A stretch of 63,651 nucleotides of DNA, counting the filler, from Reticulomyxa filosa (Eukaryota; Protista; Foraminifera): the NCBI GenBank assembly GCA_000512085.1. It is 15 parts of 15 records of this genome, joined end to end, with 100 filler letters (N's around TTAATTAATTAA, not from the genome) between each part and the next. Parts side by side here need not be neighbours in the genome. Positions count along the whole stretch, not along the records: positions 38,019 to 43,664 come from ASPP01002583.1; 14 more parts are not named here. One strand, given 5' to 3'. A program made the translations under genes and the position numbers. The notes under the pieces were generated by a model that did not search any database, had not been told where the DNA came from, and saw only the letters and a program-made list of their open reading frames with translations. Every line of letters starts with the position of its first letter. Position 1 is the first letter of the stretch. Below, piece by piece: positions 37,919 through 43,664 of the stretch.

Positions 37919-38169
37919 NNNNNNNNNNNNNNNNNNNNNNNNNNNNNNNNNNNNNNNNNNNNTTAATTAATTAANNNNNNNNNNNNNNNNNNNNNNNNNN
38001 NNNNNNNNNNNNNNNNNNATATGTTGTAATATCTTATCTCTTGCATTTATTTGAAAAGTTCTCCATACTTCTTTTTCATCAGGAGTTTAAAAAATTCAAT
38101 GTTTAAAAAACTATCTCACCAAACAAAAAAGTTTATACTGACTAATATTAAAGCATTTACCTGTAATAA

Positions 38170-39301
38170 ACACAGAAGAAAGCAGAAGCAATGTAATGAG
38201 TTTACAAAGGGAAGAGCTGTGCAAATATTTTTGAATGGAAAGTCTATGTGAAAAGTTGCAAAACACTTCGAGATTAGCGTGATAACGGTCCAAAATTGGA
38301 ACAAAGTGTTTTAAACAAACTGGAATATCAACAGAAAGCATGGACCAGGAGGAAAATCTATTTTGAGTAATGAAATGCGCAGTCGGGTGGTCAGGTGGTT
38401 GGTAACTGATAAGTGTGAAACTGCAAAGGACATACAAAGAGAACTGGAAAAAACAGACAATATATCCTTACATCACACATAAAAGCTTCTTTTAAACACA
38501 AGCGTGAACGTTTGTTAAATGGATTATTTTTTCTTTACAGTTTGATATCTATGTAATAAAAAACTAAATTCAAGATTATATTTAAACACTACACAATTTG
38601 TACAGCCAGTAGAATGAAGAAAGAAATTAAAAATGATATTCATTCCATCATCTATCTCGTGGAAGATCAACAATAAAAAATTATATCTAAGAAAATAAAT
38701 CGTCAAAACGTTTAACATTTACTATCAATTATATAAATTGGACAATTGAAGAATGGAAGAAAGAGTGTTGTCAGACGAAAGTAAGTTAAGTGTTTTTGAC
38801 TCAAATGACATGCAGTATTATGGAGAACAAATTCAAGATGTAATGTAATTCCAATAACAAAGCATAGTTTAAGATCTTTCATGACCTGGAGATATATTAC
38901 TTAGTATAGAGTGGGTTTTTGTGCAAAATCGATAATACTACATTATATCAAACAATTCTAGAGTATAAATTAATGAAAACATTAGAATGGTACCAAATGG
39001 AAAAACTTAATATCATTTTTCAACATCGAAATTTACACAAGAATGTATTTCAAAAAATAATATTCATGCTATTCAGTTGCCTTCACAGTCGCCAGATATG
39101 AATCAGATTTAACATTTGTTGAATGAATTAAAACGTCGTATTAAAAATCAAAAAATCACCTGACATCAATCTAAAGCTTGTGTGAGATTTTCAAGATGAA
39201 TGTGAAAAAATACAAGTATAATTTTGTCAGAAATTAATTAGCAGTATGCCAGATAGTGTTTTAGTACCGAATAAAAAAAAGGAGGTTATACAAAATAGTA
39301 G
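38170..39301 (+). mobile_element. Decayed Tc1/mariner (Tc1-type DDE) transposase
   Basis: Ordered remnants across frameshifts are the HTH (GKSM*KVAKHFEISVITVQNW), RQKRL.F...NWTIEEW, SDESK, KH...M.W...VG.LCKID, IIFQH, PSQSPDMNQI*HL.NELKRR, KLISSMP and GGYTK. TIRs were not identified. Confidence 0.88.
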
Positions 39302-40178
39302 TGTTTTTAAACATTTTTGACAGTAACTGTAATAATAATTTATTTATTTATTAAATTTGCAAATACATGAAAAGTCATTAAAGAAATAACAAACTTACCT
39401 CATCAAAGGACAAATGACCGATGTAACGCACGATCCTTGCGCTTTTTTGGCAGATGTTCACGCGACTGCAGACAGTAATGTGAAGAAACTACTTTGATTC
39501 TGGCGTTGATGTTTATTTTATCACATTGTGTTTACACCCCTTTTTCTTAACATTATTAAATTTATAAAAGGTAATTGAACAAGATGTTTTTAACTACCTT
39601 AATGGTAGTGAAATTACAATTTCAGAAACTTTACGTTGTTTCTTTTCTGCAGTTAATATTCAAATGAATAGTATGATCTATAGTGATGTGGACTAAGTGT
39701 AATATGAAAGGAATTTAGTTCCAAAAATCAAATTCAGTAAAAAGGAGTAAATTAACAGCAAATAATTACAGCACAATAAGGAGAACGAGTAAAACGAAAG
39801 CAAGTTGTGTTTGAAGAAGGTTTTAACCCACAGTTCCTTTATTACTTAAAATTGCATTATATTGACTTTCACTACAGATCTATTGTTTTTTTTCATTAAT
39901 AAAAAAAAAGCAATTGCTAGATGTTTTTTTAATTGAAAAAATTGTATTTTTTTTTTATTCAAGCAATGTGTTGCAAAAAAAAAGGTACAGTTACACATTC
40001 TCCATCTGACTCCAAGTTGTCATACAAAAAGCAAAGGACTTGAAGTAATTATATCAACAAAGCCATAATTTAGCCAATTTGTTTTTTTTAACAATTCTCA
40101 AAAGAACATTTTCTAATTTGAGCTTTAACTTTGGAATAATATCCAAGAAGACTGCACTTGCTCTTTTTTGAATGTGAG

Positions 40179-40492
40179 TCAACTATTGTTAAGTTCTTCA
40201 ATAATAGGCCAAACAACACCGAGCATAAATACTTGAATAGTTGAAGAAATCATATCAGTGCTAATTTGAAAGCCACCAATTTGCACACAGATAGGCAAGC
40301 TTTTGAGTTGTTTCACTAAAATTAATCTATCATCATCGTTTTCCTCAAAATATCCATATTCATAAAGCAAAGATGGCAGTCTGTCATTAACCCAATTCAT
40401 TCGGAGCAAGGCATCCAATATTAATAAGAACGAGCTGCAATTGAGTAAGTAAAAGCAGATAAATCGAGCCCAAGCAATTGTTCCTGTTGTTT

Positions 40493-40527
<35 letters not shown>

Positions 40528-41123
40528 TGAACGAATCGTCACAAGGACAAAAAAAAAAAAAACAAATTATATACAAACAAAAGATACCTTTTGGAGAATT
40601 GGGATCGTATACCAGATGCCAGCATTCAAAAACCCCAATGACAATGGCACTAAGACATCCACCAAAATAACAAATGATCAAGAAAGTGAACTGGCTGGAA
40701 GCGTAGCGTAACGTCCTTATCGCGTGCACATGCAAACGTAGAAATTTTTCGCTGGTGTCAATCACCCATGGATTGTCCTGTCCATCGCCTTGAATACTGG
40801 AACGCAAGAGTAGGAACTTCAACTGGTCCATTTTGAACAAATCTAAAAGCCACGGAGGTCCTTTAGGTTGGCCATTGGGATATGGATGCTGCAATGCAAC
40901 GACAGCCAAGATGCGGCAATACATTGTTTCATGGACCGAAATCACAGACTGCAAAGCATTGACACCATTATGTATCAGCACTGCTGTTGTGACTACTTCG
41001 CTAATGGAATAATACAATCCAATCCAAGAGAAATTCAACTGGAGTTTTTTGTCAGCACCACAGTCCTATATATATATATATATATATATATAAACATATA
41101 TATATATACACATACATATATAT

Positions 41124-41154
<31 letters not shown>

Positions 41155-41604
41155 TGTATACGTATACCCATCCTATCAAAAAAAAAAAAAAAAAAACAAC
41201 AACAACAAAACATCAAGCACCACAACAATGAGAATGACGACAGTAAAAGCCTTGTACAAATGTCCCCACAAACGCATCCTCATTCTGGTTGACACGATTT
41301 GAAAAGCGTCCACCATGGTTGGGAATTGCAAGAGCATACTTATTTGTTCCTGCAGTTTGCCTTGATAGATGAAGGCAAACAAAGAGACATACCAAAGCCA
41401 CGGGATCGTGCAGTACCACAAGCCATAGGCAAGATGCACCTTCGAGACACTCGTGCTCGACGAACGTGATATCTCTCCGCAAGGTGAAAACCCACCGCTA
41501 TCATTGCTTACAAACTGACGAATTTTGTTAATCCCTAAGCTCGTCACTCCCAGCAGCATCAGCCACATCTATTTCGCAAATACGTATCCACAAGCTCCAA
41601 AAAC

Positions 41605-41636
<32 letters not shown>

Positions 41637-41864
41637 CATTTGTTTTGTTAGAAAAAAATTCAAACTTAACCGATAACAAAGCCAACATATCAATAAAACT
41701 TTCAATTCGAGATGAAGTGTAGCCACGAAATTTGGGGAGGAAAAAATGTCCCAGTCCTGCCCAGCGCAATTTGAACCGCAATAGTTTGTGAACTTCCCAT
41801 AACTTTTCGTTGGCTTCTTTGGAAAATTCTCGTTCTTTTTTGACCACTCCATCTTTTGTTCCAA

Positions 41865-41899
<35 letters not shown>

Positions 41900-42280
41900 A
41901 GTGTCTGTGTACCATTTGGACATACAAGATTAGAGTGTGCAACATAAGAGTCCAAAAGAAGCAAACTGATAGTGGCCTTCACTTGAACTTGGACTAGACA
42001 ATTGGAATAAATCCCGGCGTCTTGTGCCAACTCGTTGTTTTCACACACTTCGAGCAAGTGGTCGTTCTCTTCGGGTCTTAATATAGTTTGGTCGTTCACA
42101 GAATAAATTGTCCTTTCTTCGATTCGTTTCTTTAAGTCCAGGATTGTATCGCCTTCTTTCAACTCGATGCTTATTGCACTGTTTGCTTCAAATGGTAATA
42201 TTTCCACTTCTCTGATGAGAGTCCATTTCAAACGAAAAAAAAAAAAAAAAAAAGCAAGTTGATACTTCTTTTTCAGTCAT
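40179..42280 (-). CDS. Ubiquitin-like domain + 7TM gustatory-receptor-like (7TMIC/GRL/DUF3537-like) protein, ~550 aa
   Basis: Exons ~42231-41913, 41852-41671, 41568-41212, 41065-40588 and 40483-40179 join via four in-phase GT-AG introns (1641 nt, 547 codons). The N-terminus is Ubl-like (IELKEGDTILDLKKRIEE...QTIL...LAQDAGI), followed by seven hydrophobic segments. The start (ATG 42280) is unresolved across a T19 run. Confidence 0.72.
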
Positions 42281-43079
42281 TGTGTATTATATTCGTCAAA
42301 CGAAGGGGTTTTTTGTTTTTGTTATCTTTTCTTCCCTTTCCCCCCATTTTCATCATTTAAATGAGGTTTTGGATGGAGTTGTGTGTCTTTACCGAATGTA
42401 TATGCGAGGCATATTAATTAATTCTCACATGGAGTTTTCTATCAGATTTTGTGTGAACGTTTGTGTTTTGTCTCTCCCTCTCAGTTGTCACCACACGCCA
42501 TATTCATGCATAACTTTTGGCTGCCATATCTGCTATCACCAGCTTAGCTTTTGGCCTTCTTAATCTTTGCATTTTTTTTTCTTTCTTATAGGCTTTATTA
42601 AAATGCCACCTTAAAAAACACTAGTTGGTTAAAAAAAATTTTCCTGGTTGAAGGCAAGCCGTTTCATTAAATTACTTTACGCGTTTTTGAAATAATTGCA
42701 TTTTGTAAAACAAAATTCTCAATATGTGAATTAAATGTGTTTATTTGGTGTCAAATGATGAACATTATTTTTTGCAAGATTTAATGATCGAATAAGTCAG
42801 GAACAAAGGTTAGTTTTCAATCGGTGATTAAAATAAAATTTGTCGTTCAAGGACTTGCAAATCTCAGAAGAGTAAAAGTGTCAACATCTTTCATTCACCG
42901 AAATAACCTCCAATGGTTCGGTTGGAGTAGTAATTTTATTTTTATGACATGAGAACATGGGAAGAGGGGCAAAAAAAAAAAAAAAAGAACTCAAAAGTCA
43001 AAGCTGTTCTTTTTGTCAAAATGTAGTGCTTTTGGTTTTGTTTAGTTATTGTTTGTATTGTTTTTGATGGTTGCTGCTA

Positions 43080-43562
43080 TTATATATTGGTAAAGGGCTC
43101 ACTGGATTTCAATGGATCAAGAGGTTTAATAGTTTCTCTTTGCACCCCCTTTTTGGTCACAACAGCAAGTCGGATGAGACCGTCACTGCTCGTGTCTCTG
43201 AGGAGGGCTAAAGACAAAGCCTTGATAGCAAATTGCTTGCATTTTTCTGCACTGTTGTACAACTCTTCATGATTTTTGAACATGCTATCGCAATATCCAA
43301 AAATGAAAGCGCTTCCACTGCCACCTGCAGAATAAGAAACTTTACGGAATTGCGTACCACCTAACGTCACTTCATACACTTGACCACCTTTGTATTTGTC
43401 CCAACCGCTAATGATCACACTCGCCTCGAGGCGCTGTTTATTCGAATAAATAATTTGTTGACACAGTTTTCGCCGCCAATTCCACTCTTGGACTTTCGTT
43501 CAATTCCGATGACAATTGTTTCAAGTAATATGCCACATAGTCACCAATGTTCTGTGTGTCCG
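43080..43562 (-). CDS. 20S proteasome beta-1 (PSMB6/PRE3-like) subunit, divergent, last exon
   Basis: It reads ADTQNIGDYV..YL, IISGWDKYKGGQVY, GGSGSAFIFGYCD and LALLRDTSSDGLIR. One extra A at 43467-43470 breaks the frame (error or pseudogene). Confidence 0.85.
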
Positions 43563-43626
43563 CTAAAATACCATTTTTTTTTTTTTTTTTTGTTATCATT
43601 TTCAAAAAAAAAATTTTCCAACTCCC

Positions 43627-43664
<38 letters not shown>

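What the first reader, a model, noticed from the sequence alone, without database searches (positions are those of the whole stretch)
40179..42280. Hidden spliced gene: ubiquitin-like domain fused to an insect odorant/gustatory-receptor-like 7TM ion channel
Seen: five exons joined by four in-phase GT-AG introns (41912-41853, 41670-41569, 41211-41066, 40587-40484) give a ~550-aa protein. It has a ~85-aa Ubl-like N-terminus, an amphipathic LLRFKLRWAGL segment and seven hydrophobic segments. Known: 7TMIC proteins (insect Or/Gr, GRLs, plant DUF3537) have a cytosolic N-terminus, a long helix before TM5 and a split TM7 preceded by a beta-hairpin ending in GF. Here FLRLHVHAIRTLRYASSQFTFLII precedes TM5. 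The C-terminus RLILVKQLKSLPICVQIGGFQISTDMISSTIQVFMLGVVW aligns without gaps to the DUF3537 end as I recall it (RQALVTYL..N..GITV.GF.LDR..LH.IF..ELSLVLW). Inference: a rhizarian member of this chemosensory channel superfamily carrying a cytosolic Ubl, an architecture I do not know to be described. It might couple a ligand-gated channel to proteasome/p97 binding or regulated turnover in a chemotactic amoeboid protist.
Basis: partly seen in the sequence, partly recalled or inferred. Interest (0 to 1): 0.85.

Follow-up and report, generated by a model that had tools for sequence, protein, structure and literature searches.

The report
Ubiquitin-like domain fused to chemoreceptor-like channel
In the foraminifer Reticulomyxa filosa, two neighbouring database genes are probably one spliced gene that joins a ubiquitin-like domain to a seven-helix membrane protein resembling insect taste/smell receptor channels, but no RNA data or confident 3D model confirms this yet.

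Summary
The piece is Reticulomyxa filosa contig ASPP01002583.1. RFI_02673 (229 aa) is named 'Ubiquitin-like domain-containing protein' in UniRef. RFI_02672 (313 aa) is named 'Gustatory receptor'.

- **Gene model.** The five exons and four GT-AG introns keep the reading frame. Introns 3 and 4 match GenBank. Introns 1 and 2 hold all the homopolymer runs that GenBank translates as poly-F and poly-K. Merging the genes gives seven hydrophobic helices. TM1 is split across intron 2, and a conserved N-terminal family block lies inside the 'Ubl gene'.
- **Start codon.** The start is unresolved.
- **Ubl.** Sequence support is weak but consistent.
- **Channel family (7TMIC).** Support comes from protein-language-model neighbours (27 of 30 are 7tm_7 clusters), three family blocks seen by eye in a published alignment, and loop lengths. 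There is no HMM hit and no homologue among 1.84 billion proteins. The AlphaFold models were unusable.
- **RNA.** No RNA run was listed.

Verdict: partly supported. This is a probable new domain architecture of a known superfamily.

The parts
42278..42280 (-). It is out of frame (+1) with the Ubl exon as assembled.
42235..42253 (-). T19 homopolymer between the ATG and the Ubl frame. T18 or T21 would put the ATG in frame.
42212..42233 (-). 22-nt GT..AG 'mini-intron' that GenBank uses to join the ATG to the Ubl frame. It is doubtful, since the mean R. filosa intron is 87 bp.
41913..42231 (-). Exon 1 in the Ubl frame (open from 42276). The Ubl domain spans about 42210-41971 and has no C-terminal GG.
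41853..41912 (-). Proposed intron 1: 60 nt, GT-AG, T32 run, GC 0.20. It is in frame, so retention would only add 20 aa including poly-F.
41671..41852 (-). Exon 2: linker, the TM0-like family block LLRFKLRWAGLGHF (41743-41784), and the first 9 residues of TM1.
41569..41670 (-). Proposed intron 2: 102 nt, GT-AG, A27 run, GC 0.25. Its last codon TAG is GenBank's stop for RFI_02673. Splicing here fuses the two GenBank genes.
41212..41568 (-). Exon 3: second half of TM1, TM2 and TM3. Residues encoded by 41278-41568 are missing from GenBank RFI_02672, although the frame stays open (shuffle p 0.004).
41066..41211 (-). Intron 3: 146 nt, with a (TA)n repeat. Same as in GenBank.
40588..41065 (-). Exon 4: TM4 with a long extension, the long loop, the pre-TM5 helix block SEKFLRLHVHAIRTLRY (40688-40753), and TM5.
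40484..40587 (-). Intron 4: 104 nt, phase 1. Same as in GenBank.
40179..40483 (-). Exon 5: TM6, a TM7a-like helix, the pre-TM7b block PICVQIGGFQIS (40260-40295), TM7b and the stop TGA at 40181-40179. GenBank instead splices out 40183-40214 (32 nt) and adds a 42-aa tail of low GC.

Best explanation
One spliced minus-strand gene of Reticulomyxa filosa has been split in GenBank into RFI_02673 and RFI_02672. It encodes about 546-562 residues.

**Predicted protein.** A non-cleavable ubiquitin-like domain sits at the N-terminus, followed by a short linker. Then comes a roughly 440-residue seven-helix membrane protein of the 7TMIC superfamily, which includes insect Or/Gr, GRL and plant DUF3537 proteins. 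It looks closest to the DUF3537/GRL type.

**Inferred mechanism, by analogy only.** The membrane part would assemble as a tetramer through the cytosolic extensions of TM4-TM6 and TM7a, with TM7b lining a cation pore. The N-terminus, and so the Ubl, would face the cytosol. There the Ubl could act as a built-in ubiquitin-like tag that recruits ubiquitin-binding sorting or degradation machinery, setting the trafficking or turnover of the channel.

**Shown:** frame continuity, composition, the hydrophobic pattern, weak Ubl similarity, language-model and motif-level similarity to 7TMICs.

**Inferred:** splicing of introns 1 and 2, the start codon, the fold, oligomerisation, channel activity and the role of the Ubl.
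For: **Identity of the locus**
- The contig and the two GenBank genes were identified. UniRef names them 'Gustatory receptor' and 'Ubiquitin-like domain-containing protein'.

**One gene rather than two**
- GT-AG introns restore one frame.
- The 291 nt upstream of GenBank's Met in RFI_02672 stay open in its frame right up to the intron 2 acceptor. Only 0.4% of shuffles do this, and GC there is 0.43-0.55, the highest in the gene.
- GenBank's stop for RFI_02673 is the TAG of that acceptor, and the next codon is ATG. That leaves zero intergenic distance, against a genome median of 426 bp.
- TM1 is 9 residues in exon 2 plus 13 in exon 3, 22 residues in all with mean hydropathy 1.94.
- The family's N-terminal block lies in exon 2, inside GenBank's 'Ubl gene'.
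- All repeats sit in the four introns.

**7TMIC membership**
- ESM-Atlas features for RFI_02672 score 0.94, with 192-198 shared features. Of the 30 nearest clusters, 27 are 7tm_7 and the other 3 are unnamed clusters with no common Pfam family, mostly plant. Exon 4 alone scores 0.90 to 7tm_7 and 7tm_6.
- The pre-TM7b block matches 7 of 10 family positions, 38 aa from the C-end where the family has 36-39. Only 1.6% of shuffles match as well at that place.
- An ungapped match to the DUF3537 C-terminus shares R, L, V, L, G, F and W.
- Helix lengths in the AlphaFold2 secondary structure fit long TM4, TM5 and TM6 and a short TM7a.
- Loops on the presumed inner side are 31, 90 and 49 aa, against 35, 11 and 14 aa outside.

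**Ubl**
- Pfam ubiquitin E 1.5e-4, with three more ubiquitin-type or Ubl-like domain families as the only other weak hits.
- PDB ubiquitin variants E 0.005.
Against: - No RNA run was listed, so no junction or start is verified.
- The ATG at 42280 is out of frame.
- Introns 1 and 2 can be read through in frame, as GenBank does.
- No Pfam or NCBIfam hit for any membrane piece.
- phmmer of exon 4 against 1.84 billion representatives, and three word-based searches, found only the protein itself. The metagenome contig scan found no relative. There is therefore no conservation evidence.
- The TM7 motif (T/S)Yhhhhh(Q/K/E)(F/L/M) is absent.
- AlphaFold2 single-sequence models were unusable: pLDDT 39 and 37.5.
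- The Atlas's own model (pTM 0.57) matched only unnamed clusters, at TM 0.60-0.61.
- K+R density is equal on the two sides, so N-in is not independently shown.
- The block comparisons were made by eye and the pattern test is post hoc.
Confidence: 0.55

Rival explanations
1. Two separate genes, as annotated in GenBank. One is a small Ubl protein with a hydrophobic C-terminal tail (RFI_02673). The other is a separate membrane protein that starts at Met 41568 or Met 41277.
For: This is the GenBank annotation. Introns 1 and 2 are in-frame multiples of three with no internal stop before the terminal TAG. An ATG follows the TAG directly, and MWLMLLGVTSLG could serve as a signal-peptide-like start.
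Against: The distance between the stop and the next ATG is zero, against a median intergenic distance of 426 bp. The read-through products carry poly-F10 and poly-K8 from homopolymer runs. The membrane protein would lack TM0 and TM1 of the family it otherwise resembles, while a TM0-like block and half a TM sit at the end of the 'Ubl gene'. GenBank models on this contig need 22-, 31- and 32-nt mini-introns, which look like frame patches.
Confidence: 0.15
2. The gene is fused as proposed, but the membrane part is a lineage-specific orphan multi-pass protein. It is not homologous to 7TMICs, and its resemblance is compositional or convergent.
For: No HMM or phmmer link to any family. The TM7 motif is absent. 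Shuffled proteins reach an Atlas score of 0.9 in 4-10% of cases, and all ten best hits sharing a family occurs for a third of shuffles. The motif match reaches 7/10 somewhere in 17% of shuffles.
Against: Independent lines point to the same family: the score of 0.94 with 192-198 shared features, UniRef's rule-based name, three blocks in the right order with the last at the right distance from the C-end, and the helix-length and loop pattern.
Confidence: 0.15
3. The 5' part is not translated or the gene is decaying. The frame break at the T19 run is real, so the Ubl exon is a 5' leader or pseudo-exon, and any protein starts at Met 41568.
For: The ATG at 42280 is out of frame, and the Ubl frame has no ATG in exon 1.
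Against: The Ubl frame stays open for about 120 codons and still scores as ubiquitin-like. A 19-base homopolymer is a typical place for an assembly length error. The proteasome gene on the same contig shows a likely 1-nt indel as well.
Confidence: 0.1

Closest known systems
Plant DUF3537 proteins and unicellular GRLs (Class-A 7TMICs; Benton et al. 2020, PMC7746228)
   Same: The core is about 440 aa with seven hydrophobic helices, and the loops are longer on the presumed cytosolic side. It has a pre-TM7b block P-I-x-V-x-I-G-G-F-x-I-S and a Trp 20 residues after GF, as in Arabidopsis DUF3537. The C-terminus ends 9 residues after that Trp. It also has a pre-TM5 helix block and an N-terminal h-R-h-h..G-h block.
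   Different: The Pfam DUF3537 and 7tm_7 HMMs do not match, and no homologue was found by sequence search. It carries an extra N-terminal Ubl domain. It comes from a foraminifer, a lineage not named in the papers I could read.
Insect gustatory and odorant receptors (Pfam 7tm_7, 7tm_6; Orco PDB 6C70)
   Same: They are the nearest neighbours by language-model features. The N-terminal GLGHF resembles Orco's GVGHF in the published alignment. The helix pattern fits long TM4-6 and a split TM7.
   Different: The TM7 motif TYhhhhhQF is absent. There is no HMM match. There is no intron just before the TM7 exon, as animal GRL genes have. Fold similarity was not demonstrated.
7TMICs fused to cytosolic N-terminal domains: trypanosomatid GRL1 with MORN repeats and GrlHz with WD40 repeats (Benton and Himmel 2023, PMC9998090)
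   Same: A cytosolic protein-interaction domain sits N-terminal to the 7TM core.
   Different: Here the added domain is ubiquitin-like. No paper in the searched library pairs '7TMIC' with 'ubiquitin-like'.
Integral (type-2) ubiquitin-like domains, as in Rad23, Dsk2 or parkin-type proteins (my own knowledge)
   Same: A beta-grasp-like sequence pattern with no C-terminal Gly-Gly, placed at the N-terminus of a larger protein.
   Different: It is attached to a polytopic membrane protein. By my by-eye alignment, the Ile44-patch residues are only partly conserved (Leu at 44, Gln at 68 and 70), so binding to standard ubiquitin receptors is uncertain.

Membership tests
7TMIC superfamily (Or/Gr/GRL/DUF3537), criteria of Benton et al. 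2020 | Sequence similarity (BLAST or HMM) to a known GRL or DUF3537 member | tested here: not met
   No Pfam hit for any exon, for RFI_02672 or for its sub-pieces at E up to 10. phmmer of exon 4 against 1.84 billion proteins found only itself.
7TMIC superfamily (Or/Gr/GRL/DUF3537), criteria of Benton et al. 2020 | Similarity by protein-language-model embedding (used by Himmel et al. 2023 as family-wide evidence) | tested here: met
   RFI_02672 scores 0.94 with 192-198 shared features. Of the 30 nearest clusters, 27 are 7tm_7. Exon 4 alone scores 0.90. This is a lead, not proof.
7TMIC superfamily (Or/Gr/GRL/DUF3537), criteria of Benton et al. 2020 | Length about 350-500 aa | tested here: met
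   Exons 2-5 encode 440 aa. With the Ubl exon the total is about 546-562 aa.
7TMIC superfamily (Or/Gr/GRL/DUF3537), criteria of Benton et al. 2020 | Seven transmembrane helices | tested here: met
   Kyte-Doolittle windows on the exon pieces find seven segments in the merged model only, with TM1 split by intron 2. DeepTMHMM or TOPCONS were not available.
7TMIC superfamily (Or/Gr/GRL/DUF3537), criteria of Benton et al. 2020 | Intracellular N-terminus | tested here: inconclusive
   K+R counts are 21 on the presumed inner side and 7 outside, but the densities are equal. A cytosolic Ubl implies N-in only if the fusion is real.
7TMIC superfamily (Or/Gr/GRL/DUF3537), criteria of Benton et al. 2020 | Intracellular loops longer than extracellular loops | tested here: met
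   Under N-in, the inner loops are 31, 90 and 49 aa, the outer loops are 35, 11 and 14 aa, and the C-terminal tail is 9 aa.
7TMIC superfamily (Or/Gr/GRL/DUF3537), criteria of Benton et al. 2020 | TM7 motif (T/S)Yhhhhh(Q/K/E)(F/L/M) | tested here: not met
   The aligned positions read L, G ... I, E. The paper states that the motif is also largely unrecognisable in plant DUF3537 and that one of four positions is kept in chytrid GRLs.
[not shown]
   AlphaFold2 without an alignment gave pLDDT 39. Foldseek on that model was meaningless, with TM 0.1-0.2. Only the secondary-structure lengths fit. The Atlas's own model matched unnamed clusters at TM 0.60-0.61. The full joined protein was not folded.
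7TMIC superfamily (Or/Gr/GRL/DUF3537), criteria of Benton et al. 2020 | Homotetramer through the anchor and pore regions | tested here: inconclusive
   A complex job with four copies of RFI_02672 residues 25-271 gave 'no answer', score 0.00.
Pfam DUF3537 (plant 7TMICs) | Conserved C-terminal block ..R-Q-A-L-V-x-Y-L..G-I-T-V-Y-G-F..L-W.. | tested here: inconclusive
   Ungapped, 7 of 43 positions are identical (R, L, V, L, G, F, W), with the same GF-to-W spacing and the same distance to the C-end. The generalised block matches 7/10 positions, with p about 0.016 at that place. The comparison was by eye and post hoc.
Ubiquitin-like beta-grasp domain (Pfam PF00240 and relatives) | HMM match to a ubiquitin-family profile | tested here: inconclusive
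   PF00240 gives E 1.5e-4 and 21.9 bits, against a cut-off of 25.4, and covers profile positions 9-41 only. Sde2_N_Ubi, Crinkler N-terminal domain and OTU1_UBXL, three more ubiquitin-type or Ubl-like families, are the only other weak hits. PDB ubiquitin variants give E 0.005.
Ubiquitin-like beta-grasp domain (Pfam PF00240 and relatives) | Beta-grasp fold | tested here: inconclusive
   The AlphaFold2 single-sequence model has pLDDT 37.5.

The most novel reading that the evidence does not exclude
A foraminiferal ligand-gated 7TMIC channel carries its own ubiquitin-like tag. Channel abundance at the reticulopodial membrane would then be set by ubiquitin-receptor-dependent endocytosis or proteasome/p97 engagement, without prior ubiquitination. 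This would be the first Ubl-channel fusion in this superfamily.
Probability: 0.2. Interest if true: 0.7.

Novelty: new variant of a known kind. Interest (0 to 1): 0.5.

Why it matters
If the merged model holds, three things follow.
1. It corrects a split and truncated annotation. The GenBank 'gustatory receptor' lacks TM0-TM2 and the conserved C-terminal Trp.
2. It names a foraminiferal (rhizarian) candidate member of the Or/Gr/DUF3537 channel superfamily. I found none named in the papers I could read.
3. It adds a third kind of cytosolic domain fused to this fold, after MORN and WD40, and this one links a putative channel to the ubiquitin system.

The result is incremental for the field, which already reports thousands of 7TMICs across the tree of life. 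It is also unverified by transcripts or structure.

Tried and rejected
- **RNA evidence.** The look-up of sequencing runs listed no run, so read laying could not be used.
- **Homologue searches.** An exhaustive phmmer with exon 4 found only RFI_02672. Three word-based searches, with RFI_02672 whole, its residues 120-271, and the 220-aa Ubl ORF, found only the two GenBank proteins. A metagenome locus scan with RFI_02672 found no relative.
- **Family libraries.** Pfam and NCBIfam gave nothing for the membrane pieces.
- **PDB sequence search.** The membrane part gave only chance matches to the oxytocin receptor, E 0.4 over 35 residues. I reject this as evidence for a GPCR.
- **AlphaFold2.** The models of RFI_02672 (pLDDT 39) and of the Ubl exon (pLDDT 37.5) are too poor to use.
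- **Complex prediction.** Four copies of residues 25-271 gave 'no answer', which is evidence neither way.
- **Literature.** No paper mentions this protein's accessions, Reticulomyxa together with 'gustatory receptor', or 7TMIC together with 'ubiquitin-like'. Neither the protein's accessions nor Reticulomyxa appear in the supplements of the three 7TMIC papers. The genome paper was not held.
- I did not search, fold or run topology prediction on the joined five-exon protein. All searches used single exons by reference or the two database proteins. I also did not enter the published GRL/DUF3537 sequences into any tool, so no hhalign or profile comparison was made. Those comparisons are by eye.
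Full report
**What the piece is.** The 5,646-bp piece (window 38019-43664) is Reticulomyxa filosa contig ASPP01002583.1, from assembly GCA_000512085.1, in reverse orientation. GenBank annotates three genes on the window's minus strand:
- part of a proteasome beta subunit gene;
- RFI_02673 (P0002, 229 aa, window 42280-41569), named 'Ubiquitin-like domain-containing protein' in UniRef;
- RFI_02672 (P0001, 313 aa, window 41277-40054), UniRef X6P7D6, named 'Gustatory receptor'.

**The observation.** The four proposed introns all begin with GT and end with AG. They are 60, 102, 146 and 104 nt long, and their GC is 0.15-0.25 against 0.35-0.46 for the exons. Removing them gives one open frame from 42276 to the TGA at 40181-40179.
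- Mapping the GenBank proteins back to the DNA shows that introns 3 and 4 are the same as GenBank's.
- Introns 1 and 2 are read through by GenBank. That puts F10 and K8 runs into RFI_02673.
- Every repeat that Tandem Repeats Finder reports inside the gene lies in one of the four introns.
It does not fit the 22-nt and 32-nt mini-introns in the GenBank models.

One point fails. The ATG at 42280 is not in the Ubl frame, and the Ubl frame has no ATG in exon 1. A T19 run separates the two. The start therefore depends on a homopolymer length error, on GenBank's 22-nt mini-intron, or on an unseen upstream exon.

An assembly indel is plausible. In the proteasome gene on this contig, the Pfam profile continues from one frame (up to profile position 88) into another (from position 95) over contiguous bases. 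GenBank's model length implies a 31-nt intron at that spot.

**One gene or two.** Several observations favour one gene.
- The 291 nt upstream of GenBank's start of RFI_02672 remain open in its frame, exactly up to the acceptor of intron 2. Only 0.4% of shuffles do so, and the other two frames hold 6 and 3 stops. This stretch also has the highest GC of the gene.
- GenBank's stop for RFI_02673 is the TAG of that acceptor, and the next codon is ATG. Two genes would therefore have no spacer, against a genome median of 426 bp.
- Exon 2 ends with nine hydrophobic residues and exon 3 begins with thirteen. Together they make a 22-residue helix with mean hydropathy 1.94.
- Exon 2 is continuous with the Ubl exon whether or not intron 1 is spliced. 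It holds a block (LLRFKLRWAGLGHF) that resembles the conserved N-terminal re-entrant block of the family in the published alignment. Orco has GVGHF at that place.

GenBank's split would therefore cut the membrane domain between TM0 and TM1. No RNA run was listed, so this remains an argument from sequence.

**The 3' end.** GenBank removes 40183-40214 and adds a 42-aa tail from DNA with GC 0.24-0.32. That Trp aligns ungapped with the conserved Trp of Arabidopsis DUF3537 proteins, which end about 10 residues after it.

**The membrane part.** Profile and sequence searches are blank.
- Pfam and NCBIfam gave no hit for any exon, for RFI_02672 or for its sub-pieces.
- Among 1.84 billion representatives, exon 4 found only the protein itself. 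The word-based searches and the metagenome contig scan were also blank.

Positive evidence is of three kinds.
1. *ESM-Atlas features.* RFI_02672 scores 0.94 with 192-198 shared features. Of the 30 nearest clusters, 27 carry 7tm_7, 9 of them with Trehalose_recp as well. The other three have no common Pfam family, and the one listed is mostly plant. Exon 4 alone scores 0.90 to 7tm_7 and 7tm_6. The tool's own calibration says such scores arise by chance in a few percent of cases, so this is a lead.
2. *Family blocks.* I read the trimmed GRL/DUF3537 alignment of Benton et al. 2020. Three family-wide blocks appear in the right order: the N-terminal block above, a pre-TM5 helix, and the block before TM7b.
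   - In the pre-TM5 helix, SEKFLRLHVHAIRTLRY aligns in the same register as the plant ..SEHL+IRR.L+I.SHR(F/Y).. block.
   - Before TM7b the family has P-I-G-I-T-V-x-G-F-x-I-T, and this protein has PICVQIGGFQIS.
   - A pattern built from the other sequences matches 7 of 10 positions, 38 residues from the C-end where the family has 36-39. Shuffles reach that score somewhere in the protein in 17% of trials, but at that place in only 1.6%.
   - My hand BLOSUM62 sum for the 43-residue ungapped C-terminal alignment to one DUF3537 protein is about 24, or roughly 14 bits. That is suggestive only.
3. *Architecture.* The core is 440 aa with seven hydrophobic segments, and the long loops (31, 90 and 49 aa) all lie on one side. 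The AlphaFold2 secondary structure shows helices of about 54, 53 and 44 residues for TM4-6, then a 9-residue helix, a break and a final helix.

Against membership, the TM7 TY..QF motif is absent. The paper notes that it is also largely lost in plant DUF3537 and chytrid GRLs. The K+R bias does not establish N-in by itself, since the counts are 21 and 7 but the densities are equal.

The decisive fold test could not be made. Without homologues, AlphaFold2 gave pLDDT 39, Foldseek on that model was meaningless, and the tetramer job gave no answer.

**The Ubl.** The exon 1 piece matches Pfam ubiquitin at E 1.5e-4 (21.9 bits, cut-off 25.4) over profile positions 9-41. The only other weak hits are three more ubiquitin-type or Ubl-like domain families. 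Designed ubiquitin variants in the PDB match at E 0.005.

By eye, the C-terminal half (..LAQDAGIYSNCLVQVQVK) follows ubiquitin's ..LSDYNIQKESTLHLVLR pattern, which I take from my own knowledge of the ubiquitin sequence. There is no Gly-Gly end. It would therefore be a built-in Ubl domain, not a cleavable modifier. The AlphaFold2 model (pLDDT 37.5) says nothing about the fold.

**Mechanism.** Everything in this paragraph is inferred. By analogy with Or/Gr channels, the core would tetramerise through the TM4-6 extensions and TM7a, and TM7b would line the pore. The Ubl would sit in the cytosol next to the N-terminal re-entrant segment. There it could recruit ubiquitin-binding sorting or degradation factors and so set the channel's trafficking or half-life. 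By my by-eye alignment the Ile44-patch residues are only partly conserved, so the binding partner cannot be predicted.

**Comparison and novelty.** 7TMICs have been reported in unicellular eukaryotes, plants, bacteria and archaea. N-terminal fusions with MORN repeats (trypanosomatids) and WD40 repeats (GrlHz) are published. I found no mention of Reticulomyxa, this protein or a Ubl fusion in those papers, their supplements or the searched library. I file it as a probable new domain architecture of a known superfamily, in a foraminifer, resting on a corrected gene model.

**Scores.**
- Full statement (one gene, Ubl, 7TMIC core): 0.55.
- The parts separately: fusion about 0.8, 7TMIC membership about 0.8, Ubl about 0.85.
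- Interest: 0.5.

Noticed in passing
window 43080-43605, minus strand: This is the 3' part of a proteasome beta subunit gene. The Pfam Proteasome profile runs to position 88 in one frame and resumes at position 95 in another frame over contiguous bases near 43440-43455. That suggests a 1-nt indel in the assembly. GenBank's model length (162 aa in 520 nt) implies a 31-nt GT..AG mini-intron there, which would delete about 10 conserved residues.
   Followed up: partly
window 40183-40214 and 42212-42233: The GenBank models RFI_02672 and RFI_02673 contain mini-introns of 32 nt and 22 nt. These are far below the genome's mean intron length of 87 bp and look like frame patches made by the gene predictor. 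The 32-nt one removes the conserved C-terminal Trp and adds a 42-aa low-GC tail.
   Followed up: yes
window 43630-43664: The contig ends in a 35-base homopolymer. Long A/T runs (19-32 bases) and (TA)n arrays also fill the introns. Assembly breaks and length errors at such runs are likely throughout this genome.
   Followed up: no
window 43080-42280: The Ubl-bearing gene lies about 800 bp downstream of a proteasome subunit gene on the same strand. This is probably coincidence, but I note it because Ubl domains often bind the proteasome.
   Followed up: no
window 38019-40050: This stretch is AT-rich and has no GenBank gene, no Rfam family, no tRNA and only short ORFs. It appears to be non-coding.
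   Followed up: partly
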